From NCBI RefSeq assembly GCF_032444005.1, contig NC_091288.1:193564001-193628000 (forward strand): 64,000 bases of DNA, read 5' to 3'. Position numbers and translations under genes: made by a program. Below, one piece after another: positions 22,979 to 58,170 of this stretch (positions within the stretch are counted from its first letter, which is position 1; every line of letters begins with the position of its first letter). The notes under the pieces are model-generated. The model did not search any database. It worked only from the letters and a program-made list of their open reading frames with translations, and was not told where the DNA came from. The DNA is from Ranitomeya imitator (taxonomy: Eukaryota).

Positions 22979-23107
<129 letters not shown>

Positions 23108-23283
23108 CTAAAAATTCAAAAAATATTGAGAAGTCAATAGGCAGCAATAAACAAAAATCATAATTCTGTGTTATGGGAAAGGGGGGGGATGAGTTTGTTG
23201 CATCTTTGTTACAAAAATGGGGCAGTAACCATTTGTATACTAGTGCAAGCTTATGCATGTAATGCCATCCATGGTTTTCAATA

Positions 23284-23319
<36 letters not shown>

Positions 23320-23348
23320 CAAATATTTCCTAATTCGAGACACCATTA

Positions 23349-23561
<213 letters not shown>

Positions 23562-28466: not shown

Positions 28467-28598
<132 letters not shown>

Positions 28599-31530
28599 TT
28601 AGGAATGTGATCTAAAGCAAAAAAATAAAGTTTTCTTCAATGTTAATTTTTAAAGTCAACCTTATCCTCATTAGAAGGCATTTTAGTTTGGTGATATTTT
28701 AGTTAGTATTAAACGGTTATTCTCTACTGCAACAAATTTGCATTTAGAAGACAAGATTACTGGCGACAACCTAAAGATTCAGTAACTGCAGATCTAGAGG
28801 CTGAACACAACTGGTTATAAGCAATGAAAGATGTGGGCAGCTGCACATCTGACCCGAAGAGACCCCTGCAGGAGAAGTGTAGAATTACATTTGAATTAAG
28901 AGTCTGGAGCAGAGTATGACAGGCATATGCACTGCAGCATCAACAGCAGATTGATTCTGTGGATAAGTAAAAAAATTAAAAAAGACACAGGATCACTATT
29001 CTAGTGAGATCTTATTAAAGTCATTGTGGAAGCCAATAGTGTCCTCCGCTTGGGGCCAGTGTACAAAGTGGCTGCAAAGACCATTTCACATCAAGAAATT
29101 GGAGATAAGTCACATAGGGAATAAACAATAAAATTGGATGTCAGCCTAGTGACACATGACATTTTAAGGATAAGTGTAAGGGGACAGATTACCCTGGAGT
29201 GGTACAGCACAAAATCTGAATGTATCCTATAGATTCTGCCACCTCTTACACCAATTGCTTACTGTCAAGAGCTCCTTTTCACTTAAAAAAAAAAAAAATT
29301 CCTCTGCTTGTCTCTAAATTGCATATACTTGGAATAAGCAATCAGATCAGTGATCACTTCTGGCAGAGTCCTAATAAACTGAAGAAACTGATCAGTGACC
29401 ACACTGGTACTGTAGCTCACCTGTTATTTCTGGAGCTACACTGAGTAGTAAACTGGAACCTGGCACTGTCCATAAGAATAAAGCCACTGGGCGCAAGCCA
29501 AAGAGAACAAGGGTTTAACCATTTAAGTTAAATGAAGAATGAATTTGAGTGGAAGCTGATGTGCAGTGGCTGAGAACAGCAACTAAACCCTGTAAACAGT
29601 GTGGGGTAACATCGCCCCTCCAGAAAATCAGCTGTAAGATCCGAGGACCTCTAGGGCAGGCCATATAAAATAGTGGAAAACCCATTATACAACATCACCT
29701 TATCTGCCAATTGTAGAAACCCACTTTAAGATGGAGGCAAAAAAAATAAAAAAACGCATGTATCAAATACATAGTTGAAATTGTGCACCCAGTATGTTCA
29801 CCTGAAATGCTGTAGCTGCATACTTCTCACCTCCCATGTAGTTATGACAAGGAGCCCAATCAGCACTGGTGTCACTGTCCCACCTTCGGATGTATATGCA
29901 ATAGAGGAAATGGGAGGTATGGCCGTCCTCGCTTCCCCTTGATTACCAATACGTCCAAAAGAAGAGTGACCAGCACCGACTGGGCATTTGGCTCATGTGA
30001 GTCACTGTCACCACACAAATTGAACATGGACGGGAAGCCAGGGGGCCAGCTCATCCTGGATTTCCCCTTCATTTTGAGTTCAGCAACACCAGCGCTTATT
30101 AGGGGATGGGCATCACATGTTCCACCGCATCACAGCCCCAGGACCGTGAGTGATGACACTGCCGAAACAGAGCCAGCACAGGAGGAGGAGTATAGGCTTT
30201 ACTACTTTATTGGGACAAACATTTAGCTTAAGAAGACGTGGTTATCCTGGTAGTGGACAACCCCTTTAAAACATGTTCTCTGAAATGTAGTAGTGTCTGC
30301 ATGAAACATACAGATATTGACTGCGCTGCTGTAGAAATCACAATCCCAGTATATGGATAAAGAAATTGGTATTATATTCACACAAGAATATTGAGAAAAT
30401 AGTGAATAAAATAGCATTTTCTTTATCCATAAACTGGGATTGTGATTTCTACAGCAGAGTGGTCAATATCCACGTTACCTTCTATCTGCTATTGTGAATT
30501 GGTCTAATGGTTTGACCTGTGGATCTGCAGCAGCTGTTGGCTCAGAGTCCTATGGGCTTTTATAATATGGAAGACTAGGTGAGTGCAAACTGATATTTTG
30601 ACACCATTATCAGCTAAGACCTCATTTGCACTTTTTCTCCTAGTGTTCTATGGAACATACATGGCAGATATCATGCAGCTTGTCTGATGGTACATTGTGT
30701 CTGAATTGGGCAGGATGTATCAGCCACCAGGTTCCCCTAGTATGCGTGACATCAGAAATCTTCATATTAACGTATTGGGGGCCTTTTAGGAACCCATGCA
30801 AATCATATGGAAAAACACTTATAACTTTAACAAGTTTATTTTAAAACGGCTAAATAAAATTTGTAAACAATTTTAGTTATAATTTTTCAACGAACACCAA
30901 ACATTTTTTCAAACATATGAAAAATAAAAAAAAATAAAAACAAAAAATCACAGAAATCTATACCAAAATAGCTGCAGCTACATTTCTATTGTTTCTTTTC
31001 TATTATATTAGTCTTCAAAACAATTTTGACAAGTTATTTTTTCGGAAGAATGTTCCTTGCAGACATTTTCCTTAAAATTGAACAAACTCTGTTTTCCTTT
31101 CTATGTTTCTTGGACACATGAAACCGCGCTCTCTTTTTCTCTCCTGGCCCTGAAATCATCTGAAACTGTACGCCACACTGTTTCATTGCTTTAGTTTGCT
31201 TTAGCAAGCCTTTCACATTGCTTCGCTGTATCATGTGAGTGCATTACAAGTTCATGACAAAGGGCCTTCAAAAATAGGAGTCTCCTGTCCTTCCTCCGTG
31301 CATGGAATTCTGGATGAGTTTTTTTGAATGAATGAATGGCTGCTGCATCAAGCATATTAGAAAAAAAAAAAAAAAAGTACTACAGGCCATCGTTTTGTTT
31401 GCCTCTTGCATGAATATTCTCCCACCATCTCATCCATTTTCTGTACACCTTTTGTTTTATTGTAATGCAGGATGATTTCTGGTTTTAATTTTCTGTTAAT
31501 ACTGCAATTGTGATGCATGGTACTGAGTAA

Positions 31531-34435: not shown

Positions 34436-35231
34436 AGGTACCTTCACACAACGATTTTGTTAACTATCATTGCAACGTCACGCTTTTGGTGACGTAGCAA
34501 CGATCCCACTAACGATCTCGTTATGTGTGACAGTGACCAACGATCAGGCCCCTGCTGGGAGGTCATTGGGGAATGATCAGGGCATTTTTTTGGTCGCTGA
34601 TCACCCGCTGTCATCGCTGGATCGGCGTGTGACGCCGATCCAGCGATGTGTTCACTTGTAACCAGGGTAAATATCAGGTTACTAAGCGCAGGGCCGCGCT
34701 TAGTAACCCGATATTTACTCTGGTTACCATTGTAAAAGTAAAAAAAAAAAAACCAGTACATACTCACATTTCGATGTCTTTCACGTTCCCCGTCAGCTTC
34801 CCTGCACTGACTGTCAGCGCCGGCCGTAAAGCAGAGCACAGCGGTGACGTCACCGCTGTGCTCTGCTTTATGGCCGGCGCTGACAGTCAGTGCAGGAAGC
34901 TGACGGCGGGGGACGTGACAGACACTCACATTCCGATATGTACTGTTTTGTTTGTTTTTTTTAACTTTCACAATGGTAACCAGAGTAAATATCGGGTTAC
35001 TAAGCGCGGCCGTGCACTTATTAACCCGATGTTTACCCTGGTTACCAGGGGACTTCGGCATCATTGAAGACAGTTTCAACGATGCAGAAGTCGTTCCCCT
35101 GATCGTTGGTCGCTGGAGAGAGCCATCAGTGTGACAGCTCCCCAGCGACCACACAACGACTTACCAATGATCACGGCCAGGTTGTATCGCTGGTCGTGAT
35201 CGTTGGCAAGTCGTTTAGTGTAACGGTACCT
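34436..35231. mobile_element. AGGTACC-family MITE
   Basis: AGGTACCTTCACAC / GTGTAACGGTACCT; flanks TAA/TTA. Confidence 0.8.
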
Positions 35232-35545
35232 TTAAAGTACTGGTTCTCTCTACTTGGTATCCAGAGGTTTTAGACAAATAAAAAAAAAACTCCTAGTCTG
35301 CAGCAATGATTTCAATTTGATACATTTTTGCACATTATTAACACTAGGACTACTGGACTCGTGACCCCGCCTAGAACTACTGAAAGGAGTCATTTTGACT
35401 CCTTGCTTGTTTTTGTTTATTTTTAGAGTTTCATTTGTGGTTATTTATTAATAATTATATTTTTTGTAATGTATTATTATTGTGAGATCCAACAGTAATG
35501 CTTTTGATTGTTTTTTTTCTGCTTTTCTTATTTTTCTACAGAAAA

Positions 35546-38536
35546 GCATTAAGCTACTTACTGGTAGCGGCATTTTTCGGAGGCCCATGACAGCACTACG
35601 AGAGAGGGGATCCGCCCTTCAGGAACAGGAAACCTACAGATACAAAAGGGCGGCACCTCTCCCTATGCATCAGTTGTATTTCAGAGCCTGAGAGGACTAC
35701 CGCGGTTAGTAGCACACAAATATACATTATATACAGTTTATGTACAAAAATAATCCATCATATTGAACTATATACCACACGTGAGATCTATCTCATTATA
35801 TATACACACACTATAGGAAGTGCAACCCCCACGTGAACAGGGAGGGAACTAAGGGTGCTGTCATGGGCCTCCGAGAAATGCCGCTGCCAGTAAGTAGCTT
35901 AATGCTTTATTCGGATTCCCATGACAGCACTACGAGAGAATTACAGAGATGTAAACTACCTTAGGGAGGGACTATAGCTTGTAGCACCCTTAACCTGAAG
36001 GTGAGATCAGAAGAGAACCCCAAGTCCAACCTATAGTGCTTGAAAAAGGTGGAAGGGGATAACCACGTAGCTGCCTTACATATCTGGTCGATCGACACTC
36101 CAGATCTTTCAGCCCAGGATGTAGCCATGGCGCGGGTGGAATGTGCCCTCAGATTCTGCGGATCGTGTACTTTGAAACTGTAAGACCTTTCCTGGGACCT
36201 TGGAAGGATAGAAACAACACATCCTCTCTTCCAAGCATCAGTGACTGATATATATTCTAAAAGACATCTCCTAACATCTAATGTATGGAGTAACTCCTCT
36301 TTGGAATTAGAAGGATTAGGGAGAAATGACGGTAACACTATCTCCTGAGATCTGTGAAAATCTGAGGCCACTTTTGGTAAATAAGCTGGATCTGGTCTGA
36401 GGACTACTCTGTCCTGTAGAAATTCTGTATAAGGGGACAGCCTAGAAAGAGCCTGTATGTCTCCTACCCTACGAGCAGATGTAATTGCCACCAAAAACGC
36501 TGTTTTGAGGGATAGTAATTTAAGTGAGGCTGAATGTAAGGGCTCAAATGGTTCCTTAGTCAAGGCTGAAAGGACTAGATTGAGATCCCAAGGCATTGAC
36601 CTATTCCTGTGTATAGGTCTGGATCTACTAGATGCTTTGGTAAACCTTGATACCCAATAATTACCCGCAATATCTTGAATCACCGGAAGCGCATTTAGAA
36701 AAGAACTTCTGGAAGCGCCTTCTTTAAGCTGGGATTCCAACTGTTCCAGCCAGACCATTAGGGATCTGGCTGTACAAGTCGCAGCCACTGCCGGTCTCAA
36801 GGATCCGGCTGCCATCTCCCAAGTACCTTTAAGGAAGGTATCCGCCTTCCTGTCAAGAGGGTCTTTAAGGGATCCCATGTCCTCGAAAGGTAATGCGGCT
36901 CTCTGATGCCTTTGCCACCGCGGCATCTAATTTAGGGGCCTTGTCCCAGGTATCCAGTCGTATCCTCAAAGGGATACCTGCGTTTTAAAGCTGGTGGTAA
37001 TGAGCCTTTCTTCTCCGGTTTCTTCCATTCTCGGAGAATCAGGTCTTGAATTTTATCATTCACCGGGAAGGATCTACGCTTCTTGTATTCCAAGCCACTG
37101 AACATTAGCTCCTGACGGGAAAGCTGAGTCTTAGGTTCTTCTAGGCCCATCGTACCTCTGACCGACTTAACTAATTTATCCACCCGGTCCAGAGGCAGAC
37201 AGAATCGGCCAGATTCCTCTTCTGATGACAAGGAAGAGAGATTTGAGCCATAAGAACCTTCCTCTTATCTTCCTCTGACAAATCAGAGATCACCGAGGCT
37301 CTCTGTTTTGAACTTCCCGCCTGGGACAGACCGCAGGGATTCCCTTACTTCTGTACGGATCATCTCACGTAGATTAGCCGTAGAAGCAGATTCTTCCGCT
37401 ACCTAGGGGAGGAAAATAAGGGTGATACCATCTATCTAGCCTGATGTCACTCAACCCCTCCACTCCTGTAGACCTCACCGTCTGTTGTATACAGGAGGCG
37501 CATAATTTTTTAGTATAAGAATCTGGTAACGGGACTTCACACAGGGCACACTCCTTATGTTTCGACTTTGCACTTTTCTTCCCCTAGAATGACAAAGTAT
37601 AAGGGGCCCGCGTCACTGAGTGAGCATTCACGTAGATCTCTTACCAGTGTACGCCAACAAAGGTATCGGAACACGAGGGGGTTCTTTGCCAGTCGATGCT
37701 CTAGATCCCTGCTTGGACGAGCTTTTACGGCTGGACTGGTCACTCCTGGCATGCTCCTTCTCCGTGGGCTTTTGTCGCACCTCCTCCGACAGCTGAAGCT
37801 GCCGCTCACCATCACTCTCCATGATGTGGATGTGACCAAAGGCAGAGCTCTAAATCCAGCTCCTGCTTAAATCCCCCTCAGATCCGGTCAGCAGGCTGCC
37901 TGGCGCCACTCTCATTGGTTCCTGCTGATGAGGCTACAGCTGGGGGGTCAGCGCAGTGTGTGAGGAGTCCGGCGTTCAGGATCGATGGGAGCCGCCATCT
38001 TGGATGACGGCGCATGCGCAGTTCCCCAGTGACCTGGAAGCGCCTGCTGACTGCCCCCTCGACGTCACTGCACCCGGAAACGCTCCAGCTAACGCTGAGA
38101 GCGATGCAGGATGCCGAAGAGCACGCAGCAGCGCTCCGGATAGCGTTCCCCTCCTGGCACCACTACCTCACCACCGCGCTGCACCACCACATGAACCGAA
38201 GGAGCGCGCTATACTTACCGGCGCCGAAGGAGATCAGGAATCCTCCGGACTCTGCTCCCTGCTGTCTACGTCACTGACGTGCAGTCCAGCCAGGACCACC
38301 GTGACGTCTTCCAGGGGCTTCCGCACCGGCCGAGGTAGGAGACCCCCCCCCGCTACCTGATTCGGTCCGGCCGGCCTGGGATCCATTACGAGATTCATCT
38401 GTAGGATCCTGTCCCTTCAGGAACAGGAAACCAACTGATGCATAGGGAGAGGTGCCGCCCTTTTGTATCTGTAGGTTTCCTGTTCCTGAAGGGCGGATCC
38501 CCTCTCTCATAGTGCTGTCATGGGAATCCGAATAAA
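35546..38536 (-). mobile_element. Internally deleted (RT/RH-less) DIRS1-like element, related subfamily
   Basis: ITRs (35584-35677, ~38432-38524) and ICR (~35858-35940) present; ~2.5 kb deletion joins Gag to YR; Gag frameshifted; TTT junctions. Confidence 0.92.
35961..36926 (-). pseudogene. Chimeric Gag-YR reading frame of the deleted DIRS
   Basis: Gag segment (LPFEDMG...LPVIQD) continues in frame into YR (IAGNYW...TSARR...AHSTR...FFKHY). Confidence 0.8.
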
Positions 38537-38866
38537 TAACAATAATTATAATAGACGTTTTTCAAACTTTTTTTATTCAAGTGCACACATATAAACAACA
38601 ACTGAAGAACAAAAAGCAGAGAAAATTTAGGTGGAGGAGCATAAAAATGAAAATATGGCGCAGAATTCACCTTCTAAACATTTGGTGTTTCGCATTTTAG
38701 GCATTGCCTTTGATTTATGGCAGTACATTGCCCGCACAAAGACTTACCACAAGTCTTACAATTGCCGACAGATCTATTTTTCTTGCACTTTTCTTTGATC
38801 TGGCAAAATTTTGTTTGAACCATCACTTCTGAACATGTAGAAACTTGGGACGTGGAACCCTTTTCC

Positions 38867-40062
38867 CTATCTGTGACATAAGGACCACTCAACTCTCACA
38901 AGCGTTTGCAAAAATGCCTTGCGTGACATTTTTTGGTGGGTAATCTCCTTGAATATTATACATGCATTTATACCCGCAAAGTCTAAGGCATTTTCAAATG
39001 CATGAACAGGCCATCTCCTTGTGGATGTTCGTGTGGTATATTTTCGTGCCATCTGATCCACTACATCTACTCCATATTTTGTTTCATTGTAAAATTTTTT
39101 TTTACTATAATTATCGGTTGTAACATTGCAACCTTTTTTCAAAAACGGGTCCAATAACTTCATTACCACATGGTCAGCTAAACGGTCCTCAGCACGGCGT
39201 GTGTCATCTTTGCCTAGATAAGGGAAGCCATTTGCCAGATATTTGCTCTCCTTATCAACAGCTAGCCAATATTTGTGGCCATATTTATCTGGTTTGGAAG
39301 GCATGTACTGCGTGAATGGACACCTAGTTTTGCTTGGGAAAAGTTGCTCAACCACCGTTATGTATGGGCCAGGTTTGTAACACGCAATACAATTTTCAAT
39401 AAACCTGTCCCACACAGTAGAAAATAGAGCAAACTTGTCCGTTTGCAGTCTCTCCGATCGAGTAGATTTCTCATCAAATCTGAGAAACCTCATAATTTCA
39501 ACAAAGCGGTCCCTAGACATTGTCGCTTTGCAAAACGGTATTCCCCAGTCATTACACCAAATACTGCTAATCGAGTGACGGTTCGTGCCAGATATTCCAC
39601 AAGCATAGAATATCGCAATGAATGCATCTAGCTCCTCATCAGATAGAGTAAACTGTAAATTATTGTTCCTGCATGCTTCTGCAAGCGTACAGTTCTTTAT
39701 ATGTGTCAATATATATGAATCAAAAAATAAACGCCATGCGCTCAAAGGACTATCGATGATATTTCTTCTGGCGTATCCTGTAGGGCCAGGTGCTTCTCGA
39801 AGAATATTTTGGCTGTCACGCCTACCAGGCAAGTGTTGTCCAATTTCAACAGGTTTCCATTGAATACCATCCGCTGAAACAAGTATTCCTTCAGATTCTC
39901 CTTCTCTGGTGTTTGTTGTTGCATTACCTTCGCCGCCATCGTTATCTGTTGTTCTTTCATTTCTGGGACGTTTTGCTGATTTTTTCTGTCCACGACCAGG
40001 AGGATGGTCACGAGGCAACATAACTGCATGAGCCCGATCCCCAGTTGATGTGCTTGGAATAT
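38867..40062 (-). CDS. piggyBac transposase, coding exon 2 (likely catalytically dead)
   Basis: MSRDRF, PSKPDKYG, TDNY, GVDVVDQM, RRWP motifs. First catalytic Asp replaced (TVVEQ vs TVDEQ); in-frame internal deletion after TDNY; frameshift ~38896 detaches the Cys-rich domain (38674-38895). Acceptor TTTTTCTCCAG|AT. Confidence 0.85.
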
Positions 40063-40105
40063 CTGGAGAAAAAGTTGATGAATATTTAGAATTTTTGTTT
40101 TGTAA

Positions 40106-40419
40106 GGGTCCGTGCACACTGGCTGGATTAGCGGCGGAATATCCGACCGGATATTCTCGCCACAATCCGGCCCGTACCTGCCCGCTCAGGTACAGAGTGG
40201 AGTTTCATACCTGAAGCTCCGCTCCGAACCCCGGGCTGGAGCCACTGTCTGGGACGGAGCCGTGCTCACGCGTAAGCAAGCGCTGCTCTGTCCCTGACAG
40301 CGGCTCCAGCTTGGGGTTCGGAGCGGAGCTTCAGGCATGAGCGGGCAGGTACGGCCTGTATTGCGGCAAGAATATCCAGATGGCTATTCAGCCAGAATTC
40401 TGCTAGTGTGCACAGGCTT
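40106..40419. mobile_element. Harbinger-type MITE within the piggyBac coding intron
   Basis: GGGTCCGTGCACAC / GTGTGCACAGGCTT, TAA/TAA. Confidence 0.7.
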
Positions 40420-40464
40420 TAACTCAGTGTGTGGAAGAACAAATAAATACACATAACTACTTAC

Positions 40465-40660
40465 CTTCTGGATTTGTTCCTTCTGAGTCTTCAGATTCAC
40501 TCGATATGTTCTGAGGAATGAAATCTTCATCACTGTCAGAATCAAATACATGTTCCTGCAATTCGGATTCAGATTCATCCTCCGGTATGGATTGCAAAGT
40601 AGCCAGAATATCCTGAGGCTTTATCAAACGTCTTCTCTCCATATTCCTCACAAATTCCAT
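40465..40660 (-). CDS. piggyBac transposase, coding exon 1 (acidic N-terminus)
   Basis: MEFVRNMERRRLIKPQDIL...SDSDEDF..., donor GAAG|GTAAGT in phase 1, compatible with exon 2; spliced ORF 1392 nt = 463 aa + stop. Confidence 0.8.
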
Positions 40661-40892
40661 AATTCTATATAGTTCCCTGCTGAAAAATAGAAATGAAAAC
40701 TAAAAGAAATAACTGTTCTGCCACCTTCAAAAGTAGGTGGGCTGAATCAGTTGACAGACAGCAAAACTATTTCATAACAATTCATACCTGTATGAGTCTT
40801 CAGAGCTCGTATGTCTGCGTCTGTTCTCTGTCTCTTCAGCTGAACTGAAAGTAAAGTTACTATCCAGAATACTGTCTCCTGCTAGGACCTTA

Positions 40893-41610
40893 AGGTACCG
40901 TCACACTTAGCGACGCTGCAGCGATACCGACAACGATCCGGATCGCTGCAGCGTCGCTGTTTGGTCGCTGGAGAGCTGTCACACAGACCGCTCTCCAGCG
41001 ACCAACGATGCCGGTAACCAGGGTAAACATCGGGTAACTAAGCGCAGGGCTGCGCTTAGTAACCCGATGTTTACCATCCTAAAAGTAAAAAAACTAAACA
41101 CTACATACTTACCTACAGCCGTCTGTCCTCCAGCGCTGTGCTCTGCTCTCCTCCTGTACTGTCTGTGTGAGCACAGCGGCCGGAAAGCAGAGCGGTGACG
41201 TCACCGCTCTGCTTTCCGGCTGACCGACGCTCACAGCCAGTACAGGAGGAGAGCAGAGCACAGCGCTGGAGGACAGACGGCTGTAGGTAAGTATGTAGTG
41301 TTTGGTTTTTTTTTACTTTTAGGATGGTAACCAGGGTAAACATCGGGTTACCAAGCGTGGCCCTGCGCTTAGTTACTTGATGTTTACCCTGGTTACCAGT
41401 GAAGACATCGCTGAATCGGTGTCACACACGCCGATTCAGCGATGTCTGTGGGGAGTCCAGCGACGAAACAAAGTTCTGGACTTTCTTCCCCGACCAGCGA
41501 CAGCACAGCAGGGGCCTGATCGCTGCTACCTGTCACACTGGACGATATCGCTGGCGAGGACGCTGCAACGTCACGGATCGCTAGCGATATCGTCTAGTGT
41601 GACGGTACCT
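40893..41610. mobile_element. AGGTACC-family MITE (inverted relative to 32821)
   Basis: AGGTACCGTCACAC / GTGTGACGGTACCT, TTA/TTA. Confidence 0.88.
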
Positions 41611-42159
41611 TTAGAAAAACACCATCCTTCATTAACATAAGATAAGAGCCTAGAGTAAACAAGCCATTTTGTTCAGCATTACACAGTAATACAAGCAGGT
41701 AAAACACAAGGAAAATGTGAAAAGTTGACATGTAAATTGAACTACATCTATATGAACATCAGGGTAAATAAGACAGAGTGAAAAAATTATGCACAAAACT
41801 TTATAGCAACATTTAGTGACAAAAGGACCTCAAAATATAGTAGGGAGTCAAAATGACTCCCTTCAGTAGTTCTTGGTAAATTTTGAAAAAACGCGCAAAT
41901 ATTTTACCAATTCTCACAAAATCTTTTTTCACATCATATTTGAGGAAAAGTCACCGAGTTTCAAGCCGGAATTCTGAAAAATGTAGTCACAGAAGAGAAA
42001 TAAAAAACGAAAGGAGTCAAAATGACTCCATCAGTAGTTCTAGTGTTAAAAAGGCATGGTAACTGCAAAAAGTAAAGACAAAACACGACTACACCAAATA
42101 AACAGTATGCACCAAATTGAAAAATGGTGCAAAATGTCCGTGATCATAAAGTCTATCTA

Positions 42160-44098
42160 CCGTATATACTTAACCCCTTAGTGACAGAGCCAATTTGGTA
42201 CTTCATGACCAGGCCAATTTTTGCAATTCTGACCACTGTCACTTTATGAGGTTATAACTCTGGAACGCTTCAACGGATCCCGCTGATTCTGAGATTGTTT
42301 TTTCGTGACATATTGTACTTCATGTTAGTGGTAACATTTCTTCGATTTAACTTGCGATTATTTATGAAAAAAACGGAAATATGGCGAAAAATTTTAAAAT
42401 TTTGCAACTTTCAAACTTTGTATTTTTATGCCCTTAAATCAGAGAGATCTGTCACGAAAAATAGTTAATAAATAACATTTCCCACATGTCTACTTTACAT
42501 CAGCACAATTTTGGAAACAAATTTTTTTTTTTTGTTAGGGAGTTATAAGGGTTAAAAGTTGACCAGCAATTTCTCATTTTTACAACACCATTTTTTTTTT
42601 AGGGACCACACCACATTTGAAGTCATTTTGAGGGGTCTATATGATAGAAAATAATGAAGTGTGACACCATTCTAAAAACTACACCCCTCAAGGTTCTCAA
42701 AACCACATTCAAGAAGTTTATTAACCCTTTACGTGCTTCACAGGAACTGAAACAATGTGGAAGGAAAAAAATCAACATTTAACTTTTTTTGCAAACATCT
42801 TAATTCAGAACCATTTTTTTTTTATTTTCACAAGTGTAAAAACAGAAATGTAACCATAAATTTTGTTATGCAATTTCTCCTGAATACGCCAATACCCCAT
42901 ATGTGGGGGTAAACCACTGTTAGGGCGCACCGCAGAGCTTGGAAGAGAAGGAGCGCCGTTTTACTTTTTCAATGTAGAATTGGCTGGCATTGAGATCGGA
43001 CGCCATGTCGCGTTTGGAGAGCCCCTGATGTGCCTAAACAGTAGAAATCCCCCACAAGTGACCCCATTTTGGAAACTAGACCCCCCAAGGAACTTATCTG
43101 TGTGGTGAGAACTTTGAATGCCCAAGTGCTTCACAGAACTTTAGAATGCAGAGTCGTGAAAATAAAAAATATATTTTTTTTTTTAACAAAAAAGATATTG
43201 TAGCCCCCAAGTTTTTATTTTCACAAGGGTAACAAGAGAAATTGGACCCCAGAAGTTGTTGTCCAATTGATCCCGAGTACGCTGATGCCCCATATGTGGG
43301 GGTAACCCACTGTTTGGGCGCACGGCAGAGCTCAGAAGGGAGGGAGCACCATTTGACTTTTTGAGCGCAAAATTGGCTGTCGTGTTTGGAGACCCCCTGA
43401 TGTACCTAAACAGTGGAAACCCCCCCAATTCTAGCTCCAACCCTAACCCCAACACACCCCTAACCCTAATCCCAACCTGATCCATAATCCTAATCATTAA
43501 CCCTAACCATAATCACAACCCTTACCCCAAAACAACCCTAATGTCAACCCTTACCATAACCCTAATCAAAACCCTAAATCCAACACACCCCTAATCCTAA
43601 TCTCAACCCCAAACTCAAACCTAACCCTAATCCCAATACACCCCTAATCACAACCCTAACCTTAACCCTAATCCCAAACCTAACCCTAATCCCAAGCGTA
43701 ACCCTAATGCCAACCCTAATACCAACCCTAATCCAAACCCTAACCCCAGCTCTAACCCTAACTTTAGCCCCAACCCTAAGGCTACTTTCACACTTGCGTC
43801 GTTTGGCATCCGTCGCAATCCGTCGTTTTGGACAAGAAACGGATCCTGCAAATGTCCCTCCCTATGGGAGGTGGAGCCACATATTCATTACTGTAATGAA
43901 CGGTACCATGTGACCGCTCAGTACAGGAAGAAGCTGAGGCACCTGGGAACCAGGGACAGCACCAGGAGCAGGCGAGTATAATTAGACAGGCCCCGCTCCC
44001 CTGCAGACCCCTGGGTATGACTTGAGTATAAGCCGAGAAGAGCACTTTCAGCACACAAAAAAGGCTGAAAATCTCGGCTTCTACTCGAGTATATACGG
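42160..44098. mobile_element. Composite: TA|CCGTATATACT-terminated (Tc1/mariner-type) MITE containing a piggyBac-type element fragment from 42174 and a Harbinger MITE fragment at 43780
   Basis: TA|CCGTATATACT ... AGTATATACGG|TA; TTAA|CCCCTTAGTGAC at 42170 resembles the right terminus of the 666/11612 family. Confidence 0.6.
43437..43779 (+). repeat. Degenerate telomere-like (CCCTAA)n tract
   Basis: ~55 hexamer-like units CCCTAA/CCCCAA/CCTAAT inside a TE fragment. Confidence 0.85.
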
Positions 44099-44197
44099 TA
44101 TCCATCTATTGTGGAAGGCAGCCACATGCAAGAAGTGATAACTTACAGATTGCTGTGACTTCCACTACAGTCCACGGTCTATGCAGGCTTATCTTAT

Positions 44198-44305
44198 CTG
44201 CCCTGTTGAGGGCAGAACAAAGTACGGCAGTGCGCAGGCGCTGGGTCTCTGACCTTTCCCAGCGCCTGTGCACTGCAGTACTTTGCTCTGCCCTCAACAT
44301 GGCAG
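44198..44305. repeat. Imperfect 48-bp-arm hairpin, probably a MITE core
   Basis: 44198-44245 pairs with 44258-44305 around a 12-nt loop. Confidence 0.75.
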
Positions 44306-45532
44306 ACAAAGTACGCCTGTGCTGCAGCGTGAAGACCACAAGAGGACGTCATCGTAAGATGGGAGGCCCCGGACCGCAATGCCCATCAGATCAGACGGCC
44401 CGCCCAGGTGAGTATAATCTAACCTTTTTATCTCATATTTTAGGATATCAGGGGGCTTATCTACCATTTTGCCAGATGGACCCGTTGAGCCCCAATTTAA
44501 CCATGAGGGGATTTTTTTTTTTTTTTTTAACCTTTTGATAACTAAAAAAAAAAAAAAAAGTTAGTTATGAACTGTCCATGAGCCACATGGCAAAAATACA
44601 TCAGTGATTACACACCAAGCCATGTGACCCAAAGGAAATGACAGATAGTGACTAAGGGCGGAGGAAAAAAAAAGTTTCTTTCCTCTTGACCCAGCTCTGA
44701 GGAGTTCCCAGGCTGCCGCTCATTAACCCCTTCACATCAGCCGAGCAGCAGCACATGTCGCATTATAGTGGTGCTCCGCTCTGCCCCCGGCGGCCGCTCG
44801 GCGCACTGCACCTCAGACACCCGCCATTATGTGATCTTTATCATCCGGCACAAAAAAAAATTCACACAAACAAATGTAGAAATAAGAGAAAAGAGCAGAA
44901 ATCCGGCACCGCGGACAGAAGACGTCTCCATTTACGGCAACGGCGCCAGAGTCACAGCAGCCGGGCCGGTCACGGCGGATTTCATTGTGGGGCTGTCAGT
45001 CCTCACCAGGGAGGGAGAAAAATGCGGGAGCCATTACCGAGCGGAGGAGAAGCTGCTGCCGCCGCCGTGTACGGGGCCTGCCCCGGGGGGGAATCACGGC
45101 ACCACACGGCGGGAGACACCTGCGGGGGCGGCACACGGCGGTGCCCGGGGTCCCCGCTCCTCCCGGGGCGCCGGCCTCCATTACACGGCAGCTTCTCCTC
45201 ACGTCCTGCCTTCTCTTCCCCCACAAGCGACGAGACAACATGGCGCCCGGCGAGCTCCGGGAAATTAGTGGGGGAGGGGTGAACTTACCGCCCGACCTTT
45301 CCACCGGAAAACCGCCAGACTAAAGATTTTCCAGTCACCGCAATAACGACTGCTGACGTAACTAACCGTCAAAAAAAATGGCGGCTACCGGATATTAACG
45401 GTAACATACCGAATCGGTACAATGACGTCACCACTACTAACCTAAGCCCAGTAAAAATCGTACCCCATTGACTAAACAGCCGCAAATCGTTACCGGATGA
45501 GTTAAAGGAGGAGGACGTAAAGAGACACTTAC

Positions 45533-45582
45533 CGAACGATGGCGGAGCGCGAAACCAACACAACCGACGAGGCGAGTAATAA
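45533..45582 (-). other. H3F3: Probable non-coding exon 1 of the H3.3 gene
   Basis: Starts ~25-30 nt downstream of the TATA box; donor CG|GTAAGT at 45532; no ATG. Alternative donor CG|GTAAGT at 45288. Confidence 0.65.
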
Positions 45583-45599
45583 CGTCCGTCTGCGCCCGC

Positions 45600-45730
45600 C
45601 GCCCCGCTTTATATAGTCTGCGCCACGTCACCCCCTGATTCGTCGCCTTTGTTTCCCTGGGAGCGGATGGTGATTGGGTGCGGGGCAGAGAGGCGAACGG
45701 TGATTGGTAGGTTAGAAAAAGGCGGGGAAA
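45600..45730 (-). promoter_or_regulatory. H3F3: H3.3 core promoter within a CpG island (~44700-45900)
   Basis: TATATAAAG (45607-45615), CRE-like TGACGTGG (45623-45630), two CCAAT boxes 30 nt apart (45672-45677, 45702-45707), GC boxes; CRE TGACGTCA at 45423 and YY1-like motif at ~45376 in intron 1. Confidence 0.75.
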
Positions 45731-55405: not shown

Positions 55406-58170
55406 TTATGGCTCGTAATGGGGGCCGGTAGTATTGCCCCTTTATGGCTGGCAGAGGGGGCCAGGAGTGTTGCCCTGTTTTGGCTCATAGAAATGGCCAT
55501 TATGGTTCCTCCGTTATCTCTCATAGAGGGGGGCGGTAGTATTGCTCCATTATGGCTTGTAGAGGGAGTCAGGACTATTGTTCCATTATGGCTTGCAGAG
55601 GGGGACGGGAGTGTTGAGTTGACCTGTTTCGATTCATATAGGGGGCTGGGAGTGTTGCCCTGTTATGGCTCATAGAGGGGGCTGGGAGTGTTGCCCCGTT
55701 TTGGCTCATAGAGAAGACCAAGAGTGTTGTTCTGTTATGGCTCGTAGAAGGGTGGGAGTGTTTTCCCATTATGGCTTGTAAAGGGAGCCGGGAGTATAGC
55801 CCTATTATGGCTGGTAGAGGGGGCCGGGAGTGTTGCCCCATTATGACTGGGTAGAGGGGGCTAGGAGTGTCTCCCTATTATGGCTCGTAGAGGGGGCCAT
55901 GAGTGTTGCCCGGTTATAGTTCTTAGAGGAGGCAAGGAGTTTTGCTCCATTATGGCTCATAGAGGGGGCCTAGAGCATTACGCCGTTATGGCTCGTAAAA
56001 GGGGCCTAGAGTGTTATGCCGTTATGGCTCGTAGAAGGGGCCTAGAGTATTATGCCGTTATGGCTCGTAAAAGGGGCCTAGAGTATTATGCCGTTATGGC
56101 TCGTAGAGGGGGCCTAGAGTATTACACCGTTATGGCTCATAGAGGGGGCCTAGAGTATTACGCCGTTATGGCTCATAGAGGGGGCCTAGAGTATTATGCC
56201 GTTATGGCTCGTAGAGGGGGCCTAGAGTATTACACCGTTATGGCTCATAGAGGGGGCCTAGAGTATTACACCGTTATGGCTCATAGAGGGGGCCTAGAGT
56301 ACTATGCAGTTATGGCTCATAGAGGGGGCCTAGAGTATTATGCCGTTATGGCTCATATAGGGGGTCTAGAGTATTACGGCGTTATGGCTCATAGAGGGGG
56401 CCTAGAGTATTATGCCGTTATGGCTCATATAGGGGGCCTAGAGTATTACGCCGTTATGGCTCAGAGAGGGGGCCTAGAGTATTACACCGTTATGGCTCAT
56501 AGAGGGGGCCTAGAGTATTACCCCGTTATGGCTCATAGAGGGGGCCTAGAGTATTACACCATTATGGCTCATAGAGGGGGCCTAGAGTATTACGCCGTTA
56601 TGGCTCATAGAGGGGGCCTAGAGTATTACACCGTTATGGCTCATAGAGGGGGCCTAGAGTATTACACCGTTATGGCTCATAGAGGGTGCCTAGAGTATTA
56701 CGCCGTTATTGCTCATAGAAGGGGCCTAGAGTATTACACCGTTATGGCTCATAGAGGGGGCCTAGAGTATGACGCCGTTATGGCTCATAGAGGGGGGCCT
56801 AGAGCATTACGCCGTTATGGCTCATAGAGGGGGCCTAGAGTATTACGCCGTTATGGCTCATAGAGGGGGCCTAGAGCATTACGCCGTTATGGCTCATAGA
56901 GGGGGGCCTAGAGCATTACGCCGTTATGGCTCATAGAGGGGGCCTAGAGCATTACGCCGTTATGGCTCATAGAGGGGGCCTAGAGCATTATGCCGTTATG
57001 GCTCATAGATGGGGCCTAGAGTATTACGCCGTTATTGCTCATAGAGGGGGCCTAGAGTATTACGCCATTATGGCTCATAGAGGGGGCCTAGAGTACTATG
57101 CCGTTATTGCTCATAGAGGGGGCCTAGAGTATTACGCCATTATGGCTCATAGAGGGGGCCTAGAGTATTACCCCGTTATGACCCATAGAGGGGGCCTAGA
57201 GTATTACCCCGTTATGGCTCATAGAGGGGGCCTAGAGTATTACGCCGTTATGGCTCATAGAGGGGGCCTAGAGTATTACCCCGTTATGACCCATAGAGGG
57301 GGCCTAGAGTATTACCCCGTTATGGCTCATAGAGGGGGCCTAGAGCATTACGCCGTTATGGCTCATAGAGGGGGCCTAGAGTATTACCCCATTATGGCTC
57401 ATAGAGGGGGCCTAGAGTATTACGCCGTTATGGCTCATAGCGGGGGAATAGAGTATTACGCGTTATGGCTCATAGAGGGGGCCTAGAGCATTACGCCGTA
57501 ATGGCTCGTAGAGGGGGCCTAGAGTATTACCCCGTTATGGCTCATAGAGGGGGCCTAGAGTATTACACCGTTATGGCTCATAGAGGGGGCCTAGAGCATT
57601 ACGCCGTTATGGCTCGTAGATGGGTCCAGGAGTGTTCCCCCGTTATGGCTCATAGAGGGGACCTAGAGTATTATGCCGTTATGGCTCATAGAGGGGGCCT
57701 AGAGTATTACCCCGTTATGGCTCATAGAGGGGGCCTAGAGTATTACACCGTTATGGCTCATAGAGGGGGCCTAGAGTATTACACCGTTATGGCTCATAGA
57801 GGGGGCCTAGAGTATTATGCCGTTATGGCTCATAGAGGGGGCCTAGAGTATTACCCCGTTATGGCTCATAGAGGGGGCCTAGAGTATTACACCGTTATGG
57901 CTCATAGAGGGGGCCTAGAGTATTACACCGTTATGGCTCGTAGAGGGGGCCTAGAGCATTATGCCGTAATGGCTCGTAGAGGGGGCCTAGAGTATTACCC
58001 CGTTATGGCTTGTAGAGGGGGCCTAGAGTATTACGCCGTTATGGCTTGTAGATGGGTCCAGGAGTGTTGCCCCGTTATGGCTCATAGAGGGGGCCAGAGT
58101 TTTGCCCATTATGGCTCGTAGACGGGTCCAGGAGTGTTGGCCAGTTATGGCTCGTAGAGGGGGCCGAGAG
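55406..58170 (+). repeat. 36-bp minisatellite (ATGGCTCATAGAGGGGGCCTAGAGTATTACGCCGTT)
   Basis: ~75 units; homogeneous core ~55950-58030, degenerate at both edges. Confidence 0.97.

What the first reader, a model, noticed from the sequence alone, without database searches (positions are those of the whole stretch)
38572..45582. piggyBac transposase gene positioned as a natural exon trap for the H3.3 promoter
Seen in sequence: a TTAA-flanked piggyBac (35342-42045) lies in H3.3 intron 1 on the H3.3 strand. A long pyrimidine tract ends in a tandem acceptor TTTTTCAG|CAG (40680/40677), 19 nt upstream of the transposase ATG (40660). A phase-1 intron (40063-40464) gives an open 463-aa spliced ORF, and an AATAAA lies at 38572-38577. 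The probable H3.3 exon 1 has no ATG. Established: piggyBac PGBD3 acts as a splice-acceptor/poly(A) exon trap in ERCC6 (CSB-PGBD3). Inference: splicing 45533 to 40679 would put the transposase under a strong constitutive promoter and divert transcripts from H3.3. The protein has lost its first catalytic Asp, carries an in-frame internal deletion and lacks the Cys-rich domain, as some domesticated PGBD proteins do. Simple decay is equally possible.
Basis: partly seen in the sequence, partly recalled or inferred. Interest (0 to 1): 0.72.

Follow-up and report, generated by a model that had tools for sequence, protein, structure and literature searches.

The report
Dead piggyBac copy in H3.3 intron
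A broken copy of a multi-copy poison-frog piggyBac transposon sits in the first intron of a histone H3.3 gene; its "exon-trap" look (splice acceptor, intron, poly(A) signal) belongs to the whole transposon family, and nothing shows that the H3.3 promoter uses it.

Summary
A TTAA-flanked piggyBac (35342-42045, minus strand) lies in sense orientation in intron 1 of an H3.3 gene of Ranitomeya imitator. Its 463-aa spliced ORF is exactly RefSeq model XP_069590393.1.

The trap-like features are not special to this locus. The acceptor TTTTTCAG|CAG, an upstream donor, the ATG, the coding intron and the AATAAA are identical in four other copies from three other dendrobatid species. One of those copies is fully intact.

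The window copy carries private damage:
- catalytic D to V;
- a 255-nt internal deletion;
- a 2-nt deletion that puts the Cys-rich domain out of frame (it is present, not missing);
- a lost codon;
- two nested transposon insertions.

Divergence from the other copies is the same in coding and non-coding parts, and private N:S is 6:4.

RNA-type contigs from four public runs splice the coding intron exactly. They carry the family letter at every window-private site that was laid, and their length matches an undeleted element. None joins H3.3 exon 1 to the acceptor.

Best reading: a decaying non-autonomous copy, not a domesticated trap. Raw junction reads were not available, so rare chimeric transcripts are not excluded. 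The scan has noted other piggyBac families in this genome before.

The parts
45533..45585 (-). H3.3 non-coding exon 1. The donor cgttcg|gtaagt has last exon base 45533. The 5' end is inferred from TATATAAA at 45615-45608. The exon has no ATG.
   Evidence: sequence read directly; the transcription start is an inference
28468..28611 (-). H3.3 exon 2. The acceptor is ttgctttag|a, the ATG is at 28595, and it encodes [42 protein letters not shown], with Ser31 typical of H3.3.
22982..23507 (-). H3.3 coding exons 3 and 4. The range runs from the first to the last H3 motif hit; exact exon ends were not mapped.
35338..42049 (-). The piggyBac element (42045-35342) with its TTAA target-site duplications (42049-46 and 35341-38). 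It lies in H3.3 intron 1 on the H3.3 strand.
40788..42045 (-). 5' terminal repeat and the element's own 5'-UTR exon, ending at the donor CATACAG|GTATGA (40788/40787). It is interrupted by a nested palindromic element.
40893..41606 (.). Nested palindromic (MITE-like) insertion. It is private to this copy and absent from L002-L005 and from the RNA-type contigs.
40680..40787 (-). The element's 5'-UTR intron, ending in the tandem acceptor TTTTTCAG|CAG. Private 3-nt and 5-nt deletions lie in it; the last 24 nt before the AG are unchanged.
40465..40679 (-). First coding exon, with ATG at 40660-40658, encoding MEFVRNM...GTNPE.
40063..40464 (-). Phase-1 coding intron (GT..AG) holding a roughly 300-nt palindrome. 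It is present in all five genomic copies and precisely removed in the RNA-type contigs.
38867..40062 (-). Second coding exon of the 463-aa model, with a premature stop at 38869-38867. It matches Pfam DDE_Tnp_1_7, but only profile positions 1-214 of 349 in the best stretch.
39350..39352 (-). Codon 303: GTT (Val) where the family has GAT (Asp). This Asp aligns to T. ni piggyBac D268, the first catalytic Asp.
39095..39107 (-). Junction of the private 255-nt in-frame deletion. It removes the equivalent of about T. ni residues 349-437, between D346 and D447.
38897..38898 (-). Site of a private 2-nt deletion in a GAGAGA run. It causes the frameshift that ends the ORF 10 codons later.
38674..38892 (-). 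Coding sequence of the C-terminal Cys-rich domain (CQIKEKCKKNRSVGNCKTCGKSLCGQCTAINQRQCLKCE). It is intact but out of frame with the upstream ORF.
38572..38577 (-). AATAAA poly(A) signal, invariant in all five copies.
35546..38533 (.). Nested 3-kb insertion with 125-nt inverted terminal repeats (35573-35697 / 38411-38535) and a 321-aa ORF. It is absent from L002-L005. I read it as DIRS-like from memory of that group; Pfam found nothing.

Best explanation
This is one defective, non-autonomous copy of a young, multi-copy piggyBac family of dendrobatid poison frogs. It landed by TTAA cut-and-paste in sense orientation in intron 1 of a Ranitomeya imitator H3.3 gene and has been decaying there since.

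The family's own transposase gene has three exons. A 5'-UTR exon starts near the left end of the element. A roughly 110-nt UTR intron ends in TTTTTCAG|CAG, 19 nt before the ATG. A phase-1 coding intron and an AATAAA follow. Those signals serve the element's own expression and were carried into H3.3 ready-made.

The window copy cannot make a working transposase. It has lost the first catalytic Asp, about 84 residues between the second and third Asp, and the reading frame before the Cys-rich domain. Its 5'-UTR exon and 3' UTR are split by later insertions.

The ORF is still long because the copy is young: 23 strictly private substitutions in about 3 kb. Selection is not needed to explain that. 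Any splicing of H3.3 exon 1 into it would be incidental noise.

Shown here: the anatomy, the family-wide signals, the private lesions, and that the visible RNA comes from other copies. Inferred: that there is no function at this locus.
For: - The window ORF equals RefSeq XP_069590393.1 of R. imitator, chromosome CM064365.1.
- The word search and cluster look-up together list dozens of models at 92-99% aa identity, on at least 10 different records in Phyllobates terribilis, and also in Dendrobates tinctorius and R. variabilis.
- Four other genomic copies (L002-L005) share TTAA, the terminal repeats, the UTR donor, the acceptor, the ATG, the coding-intron splice sites and the AATAAA without a single change in those signals.
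- L003 is intact: its exon-3 ORF is 535 aa, it covers Pfam DDE_Tnp_1_7 positions 1-349 of 349, its three Asp align to D268/D346/D447 of PDB 6x67, and its Cys-rich domain is in frame.
- The window's lesions are private: D>V, R>C, W>C, C>S, a 3-nt codon loss, a 255-nt deletion whose breakpoints differ from those of L002, a 2-nt frameshift, and two nested insertions.
- There is no selection signal. Private coding changes away from the deletion junction give N:S = 6:4. Identity to the other copies is 97.3-99.5% in UTR, intron and coding parts alike.
- In the RNA-type contigs of X1 and X3, a 2213-nt contig joins 40062|40465 exactly. At all nine window-private substitution sites that tabulates (of the 16 that one search finds within the laid stretch), every contig laid in any of the four runs shows the family letter. 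The contigs also lack the window's private indels and its palindromic insertion.
- No contig piece lies on H3.3 exon 1 in X1, X3 or X11. In X20, exon 1 has depth 3224 against 4-16 on the transposase, and that transposase signal carries non-window letters.
Against: - The geometry really does permit trapping. The acceptor and its last 24 upstream bases are intact, exon 1 and the 19-nt leader have no ATG, the stop lies in a terminal exon, and the AATAAA is intact.
- The acceptor is reached 4.9 kb after exon 1, long before the true exon 2 at 16.9 kb.
- All runs were assembled contigs of guessed type. Contigs drop minority variants and cannot show rare junctions.
- Contigs resembling human sequence are filtered out silently, which probably removed the normal H3.3 mRNA. 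Absence of a chimeric contig is therefore weak evidence.
- N:S rests on 10 substitutions.
- Whether the insertion is fixed, or shared with sister species, could not be tested.
Confidence: 0.8

Rival explanations
1. Leaky but non-adaptive exon trap. A measurable share of H3.3 primary transcripts is spliced from exon 1 to the element's acceptor and ends at its AATAAA. This slightly lowers H3.3 output and produces a useless truncated protein, tolerated because frogs have a second H3.3 gene.
For: The element is in sense orientation. It has an intact strong acceptor, an ATG-free leader and an intact AATAAA. Cosby et al. (bioRxiv 10.1101/2020.05.07.082677) found that acceptors immediately upstream of transposase ORFs are what host genes use to capture transposases. 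Some gene models of this family in P. terribilis and R. variabilis span 72-130 kb with foreign N- or C-terminal exons. In X11, a contig ends its match exactly at 40679 with 31 further letters that lie nowhere on the laid stretch.
Against: No contig piece covers exon 1 in X1, X3 or X11, and no window-private letter appears in any transposase contig. In X20, transposase depth is under 0.5% of exon-1 depth and carries non-window letters. The foreign letters in X11 are not H3.3 exon 1, because the 45440-45630 bin has zero depth in X11.
Confidence: 0.12
2. Nascent domestication. The H3.3 promoter drives a catalytically dead, truncated transposase that keeps its N-terminal region and acts as a repressor of the still-active family (in the manner of the KP repressor of P elements), or as a new DNA-binding factor.
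For: The ORF stays open for 463 aa despite a 255-nt deletion that happens to be in frame. The family has at least one intact copy and is transcribed, so a repressor could be useful. PGBD3-CSB is a precedent for a piggyBac trapped by a host gene.
Against: The terminal repeats and TTAA are intact, as in a mobile copy. The copy has a private frameshift, CpG-type R>C changes and a W>C change. Divergence is equal in coding and non-coding parts. There is no transcript evidence for this copy. Other copies carry independent deletions in the same region (L002, L004), so such deletions are routine decay.
Confidence: 0.04
3. The copy is expressed from the element's own left-end promoter as an independent nested gene, as the separate RefSeq model implies, and not from H3.3.
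For: RefSeq lists it as a separate protein model. RNA-type contigs of the family reach the left end of the element at 42045.
Against: In this copy a 714-bp palindromic insertion splits the 5'-UTR exon. All RNA-type contigs lack that insertion and lack the window-private letters. The RefSeq model may rest on reads from paralogues.
Confidence: 0.04

Closest known systems
CSB-PGBD3 (piggyBac PGBD3 in intron 5 of human ERCC6)
   Same: A sense-oriented piggyBac sits in a host intron, with a splice acceptor just upstream of the transposase ORF and its own poly(A) signal, so upstream host exons can be spliced to it (named as a precedent).
   Different: PGBD3 is fused in frame to coding exons, is conserved for more than 40 My and is abundantly expressed. 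Here the host exon is non-coding, the copy is young and privately damaged, and no chimeric transcript is seen. Conservation of the insertion across species could not be tested.
Transposase capture through acceptors provided by the transposon (Cosby et al., KRABINER and other host-transposase fusions)
   Same: [quoted passage not shown] In this family it is invariant in five copies from four species.
   Different: Those cases yield fusion proteins kept by selection. Here there is only the predisposing anatomy.
Autonomous piggyBac elements (T. ni piggyBac, PDB 6x67; piggyBat, PDB 9c0f)
   Same: TTAA target duplication, terminal and subterminal repeats, DDE_Tnp_1_7 core, DDD triad and C-terminal Cys-rich domain are all present in the family's intact copy L003.
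   Different: The family's transposase gene is split by a UTR intron and a phase-1 coding intron. The window copy lacks the first Asp, about 84 core residues, and an in-frame Cys-rich domain.
Internally deleted non-autonomous derivatives of DNA transposons
   Same: The ends are intact and the interior is deleted. Independent deletions in the same region occur in other copies (L002, L004).
   Different: None. This is what the window copy is.

Membership tests
piggyBac superfamily transposon | TTAA target-site duplication at both ends | tested here: met
   TTAA at 42049-42046 and 35341-35338. The same holds in L002-L005.
piggyBac superfamily transposon | Terminal inverted repeats | tested here: met
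   CACTAGAACTACTG and CACTAGGACTACTG match at 13 of 14 positions. Subterminal GGAGTCATTTTGACTCC occurs 3 times against 0.01 expected.
piggyBac superfamily transposon | DDE_Tnp_1_7 (PF13843) transposase core | tested here: met
   E = 2.4e-46, but the best stretch covers only profile positions 1-214 of 349 in the window. The family copy L003 covers 1-349 at 4.8e-69.
piggyBac superfamily transposon (autonomous, active copy) | Catalytic DDD triad | tested here: not met
   The window has V/D/D: codon 303 is GTT where the family has GAT, which aligns to D268 of 6x67. L003 has all three Asp.
piggyBac superfamily transposon (autonomous, active copy) | C-terminal Cys-rich domain in frame | tested here: not met
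   The coding sequence is present at 38892-38674 but out of frame after a private 2-nt deletion at 38898/38897.
Domesticated piggyBac-derived gene / host exon trap (PGBD3-like) | Chimeric transcript joining a host exon to the transposase acceptor | tested here: inconclusive
   No contig joins 45533 to 40679, and no exon-1 piece is laid in X1, X3 or X11. Only assembled contigs were available, not raw reads.
Domesticated piggyBac-derived gene / host exon trap (PGBD3-like) | Purifying selection on the captured ORF | tested here: not met
   Private N:S is 6:4. There is a frameshift and a catalytic loss. Identity is 97.3-99.5% in coding and non-coding parts alike. The counts are small.
Domesticated piggyBac-derived gene / host exon trap (PGBD3-like) | Orthologous retention across species | not testable with these tools
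   No neighbouring gene lies within reach. An H3.3 look-up would need a hand-joined spliced model of a protein identical to the human one, so it was left out.
Domesticated piggyBac-derived gene / host exon trap (PGBD3-like) | Locus-specific signals: splice or poly(A) sites gained or kept at this locus beyond the family state | tested here: not met
   The acceptor, donor, ATG, coding-intron sites and AATAAA are identical in five copies from four species.
Histone H3.3 gene (host) | Intron-containing H3 gene with Ser31 | tested here: met
   Exon 2 encodes ...[16 protein letters not shown], and the H3 motifs are spread over three coding exons. Residues 87-90 were not read.

The most novel reading that the evidence does not exclude
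In some tissue, for example germline or early embryo, H3.3 exon 1 is spliced to the element's conserved acceptor. The H3.3 promoter then constitutively makes a 463-aa catalytically dead transposase fragment that dampens the still-active family or modulates H3.3 dosage. That would be an exon trap caught at birth.
Probability: 0.05. Interest if true: 0.6.

Novelty: new member of a known kind. Interest (0 to 1): 0.2.

Why it matters
As it stands this is an ordinary decaying transposon copy in an intron, already carried in RefSeq as an uncharacterized protein. It is a likely example of a transposon fragment annotated as a gene because reads from paralogues support its intron.

The more useful result is about the family. 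Dendrobatid frogs carry a young piggyBac lineage with a spliced transposase gene, at least one intact copy (in P. terribilis), and transcripts of undeleted length in Ranitomeya-type RNA runs. Its built-in acceptor directly upstream of the ATG is the kind of feature that predisposes transposases to capture by host genes.

If chimeric H3.3 transcripts were ever found, this locus would be a very early stage of such a capture.

Tried and rejected
- **Reads.** All runs offered were assembled contigs of guessed type. Junction, start and end counts from raw reads were not available, and the 3' end near 38550 lay outside the 6-kb limit.
- **Earlier notes by place and by exon-trap words.** Nothing was found.
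- **Exact look-up of the 463-aa product.** It is found only on the genome record, with no transcript contig. This is uninformative, because the undeleted family protein seen in the RNA-type contigs is also missing from that collection.
- **Orthologous locus in sister species.** ORFs of 90 aa or more show no neighbouring gene in the 18 kb upstream of H3.3.
- **P0007 locus.** No DNA was returned because the gene range is 130 kb, so the foreign upstream exons could not be mapped.
- **The shared-deletion idea.** I considered that the internal deletion defines an amplified subfamily shared with L002. This is rejected, because the breakpoints differ.
- **Pfam on the out-of-frame Cys-rich ORF and the nested 321-aa ORF.** The only hit was a sub-threshold B-box match.
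- **Not done.** The large HMMER search and structure prediction were skipped, because the family assignment was already clear. The N run at 1509-1747 was left untouched.

Full report
**1. Observation**

The host gene is on the minus strand. Six-frame motif search finds H3 motifs at 28592-28545, 23507-23400 and 23092-22982. Exon 2 begins at 28611 after ttgctttag, with ATG at 28595 and Ser31 in KSAPSTGG, which marks H3.3.

Upstream, TATATAAA (45615-45608), two CCAAT boxes and a TGACGTGG precede a short ATG-free exon. That exon ends cgttcg|gtaagt with last base 45533. Intron 1 therefore spans 45532-28612.

Within intron 1, on the same strand, a piggyBac runs from 42045 to 35342 between two TTAA. 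Its ends are CACTAGAACTACTG and CACTAGGACTACTG. The subterminal GGAGTCATTTTGACTCC occurs three times in the window against 0.01 expected by chance.

- the acceptor tttttcag|cag, where the intron ends at 40680 or 40677;
- the ATG at 40660;
- the GT..AG intron at 40464-40063;
- the AATAAA at 38577-38572.

The second coding exon matches Pfam DDE_Tnp_1_7 at 2.4e-46, but only over profile positions 1-214 of 349 in its best stretch.

**2. Identity of the genome and of the ORF**

A word search with the second coding exon found dozens of near-identical proteins (92-99%) in Phyllobates terribilis, Dendrobates tinctorius and Ranitomeya variabilis. The P. terribilis proteins lie on at least 10 different records.

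It maps to GCA_032444005.1, chromosome CM064365.1. The fetched locus L001 is 100% identical to the window over 7.3 kb.

**3. The family and its gene structure**

I fetched four other genomic copies: L002 and L003 (P. terribilis), L004 (D. tinctorius) and L005 (R. variabilis). They align to the window element end to end, except for two blocks that only the window has:
- 41606-40893, a perfect palindrome;
- 38533-35546, bounded by 125-nt inverted repeats and carrying a 321-aa ORF with no Pfam hit.

L003 is a 3245-bp element with an intact gene. Its exon-3 ORF is 535 aa and runs through the Cys-rich domain to ...CETPNV. It covers the whole Pfam profile, positions 1-349. It aligns to T. ni piggyBac (PDB 6x67) with Asp at the positions of D268, D346 and D447.

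All five copies are identical at these signals:
- the donor-like CATACAG|GTATGA (window 40788/40787);
- the acceptor TTTCTATTTTTCAG|CAG;
- the 19-nt leader and the ATG;
- the coding-intron donor GAAG|GTAAGT and the AG dinucleotide of its acceptor (the few bases before the AG vary between copies);
- the AATAAA.

The palindrome inside the coding intron is also shared.

The trap-like anatomy is therefore the family's own three-exon transposase gene, not something that arose at H3.3. [quoted passage not shown]

**4. The state of the window copy**

Against the other four copies, the window has 23 strictly private substitutions in about 3.0 kb, plus private indels. The damaging changes are:
- codon 303 GAT>GTT, the D268 equivalent;
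- R>C at a CpG, W>C and C>S;
- loss of one Ile codon after 39758;
- a 255-nt deletion at 39107/39098 that removes the core between the second and third Asp;
- a 2-nt loss in a GAGAGA run after 38898.

The 2-nt loss shifts the frame, so the ORF stops at 38869-38867. The coding sequence of the Cys-rich domain, still intact, continues in another frame to 38674.

L002 and L004 carry deletions in the same region with different breakpoints. Such deletions are recurrent decay, and this one being in frame is a one-in-three accident.

Away from the deletion junction, private coding changes are 6 non-synonymous to 4 synonymous. Identity to the other copies by region:

| Region | Identity to other copies |
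|---|---|
| 5' part | 98.4-98.9% |
| First coding exon | 97.7-99.5% |
| Coding intron | 97.3-97.5% |
| Main coding exon | 98.6-98.8% |
| 3' part | 98.8-99.1% |

Nothing marks the coding sequence as constrained at this locus. The counts are small.

**5. RNA evidence**

The run search returned only assembled contigs of guessed type. I laid X1, X3, X20 (organism A) and X11 (organism C) on 39640-45630.

*The coding intron is really spliced.* X1 and X3 each hold a 2213-nt contig whose pieces lie on 39640-40062 and 40465-40682. The coding intron is removed to the base. Depth inside the intron is 0-0.5, against 45-112 on the exons. Because all five genomic copies keep the intron, these runs behave as RNA.

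*The visible RNA is not from this copy.* At every window-private site that one search lists, all of the depth laid there (not every run covers every site) carries the family letter: 41901, 41665, 40763, 40571, 40502, 40419, 40418, 39899 and 39881. One search finds 16 such sites within the laid stretch; tabulates nine of them. The contigs also carry the bases that the window has lost: a TC after 40824, 8 gap positions in 40653-40817, and 3 in 39640-40062. They skip the 40893-41606 insertion.

*The contig length fits an undeleted element.* From 3 nt before the acceptor to the 3' end of the element, without the coding intron, the expected lengths are 2211 nt (L003), 2209 nt (L005) and 1951 nt (window copy). 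The visible RNA therefore comes from one or more undeleted paralogues.

*The break-point is compatible with the element's own donor.* The contig stops at 40682, three bases past the acceptor. That is where the unspliced form (TTTCAG|CAG) and a form spliced from the element's own donor (ATACAG|CAG) would first differ. This point is an inference.

*H3.3 exon 1 is not joined to the element.* No contig piece lies on the 45440-45630 bin in X1, X3 or X11. X11's contig stops matching exactly at 40679 and has 31 more letters, but these do not lie on exon 1. In X20, exon 1 has depth 3224, while the transposase has depth 4-16 and carries non-window letters.

*Limits.* Contigs drop minority variants. The run types are guesses. 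Contigs resembling human sequence are removed silently, which probably took out the normal H3.3 mRNA. It does not show that the junction never occurs.

**6. Explanation and rivals**

The best-supported account (0.8) is a decaying non-autonomous copy whose trap-like signals are inherited family features.

A leaky, non-adaptive trap (0.12) is compatible with the geometry. It is also compatible with the long chimeric gene models of this family at other loci, which span 130, 79 and 72 kb. I could not verify those models, and some of their odd N-termini are frame-shifted readings of the same leader.

Nascent domestication (0.04) and independent expression from the element's own promoter (0.04) have no positive evidence here.

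**7. Comparison with known systems and novelty**

The element works like any internally deleted DNA transposon. Its position resembles the starting state of CSB-PGBD3 or KRABINER-type capture, but three defining features of a captured gene fail or are unshown: the chimeric transcript, selection on the ORF, and locus-specific signals. A fourth, orthologous retention across species, could not be tested.

It is a new member of a known kind, and interest is low.

Earlier notes of this scan record several other piggyBac families in this genome, some intact or spliced. I used them only as context and did not test them.

Noticed in passing
L003:5313-8557 (Phyllobates terribilis, JBJBSG010000004.1): An apparently intact 3245-bp copy of the same family. 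It has TTAA, both ends, a spliced transposase of about 615 aa with the full DDE_Tnp_1_7 profile, the DDD triad and an in-frame Cys-rich domain. It is a candidate active vertebrate piggyBac. Its RefSeq model (P0006) instead splices from inside the ORF to exons up to 72 kb away.
   Followed up: partly
window 35338-42049 versus L002-L005: Copies from three genera (Ranitomeya, Phyllobates, Dendrobates) are 97.3-99.5% identical even in intron and UTR. In contrast, a 175-nt stretch of H3.3 intron 1 from organism C (X11) is only about 94% identical to the window. The family is either very recently active in all lineages or has moved between them.
   Followed up: no
window 40465-40679 (X11 record 10): In organism C, the dominant contig entering the first coding exon stops matching exactly at the acceptor (40679). 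It continues with 31 letters that lie nowhere on the laid stretch. This may be a foreign upstream exon spliced to the family acceptor at another locus.
   Followed up: no
window 35546-38533: A nested 3-kb insertion with 125-nt inverted terminal repeats and a 321-aa ORF ending ...AHSTRAMATSWAERSGVSIDQICKAATWLSPSTFFKHYRLD. From memory this looks like a tyrosine recombinase of a DIRS-like retroelement. Pfam found no match.
   Followed up: partly
window 40893-41606 and 34444-35160: Two copies of a long palindromic (MITE-like) repeat family lie here, one inside the piggyBac and one just outside its 3' end. Their depth in the RNA-type runs is 1,800-50,000.
   Followed up: no
window 42050-44440: The H3.3 intron sequence next to the piggyBac 5' end consists of very high-copy repeats, with contig depth up to about 670,000 in X20. 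It includes GLGL-coding simple repeats around 43650-43850.
   Followed up: no
window 55880-58121: A long tandem array whose + strand reads as repeated (A)VMAHRGGLEYY units, in ORFs of 315, 186 and 218 aa. It is probably a satellite and not a gene.
   Followed up: no
window 40063-40464: The family's coding intron is about 90 nt of ordinary intron plus a roughly 300-nt palindrome, shared by all five copies. A small inverted-repeat element therefore seems to have entered the intron before the family amplified. L003 lacks 34 nt of it.
   Followed up: partly
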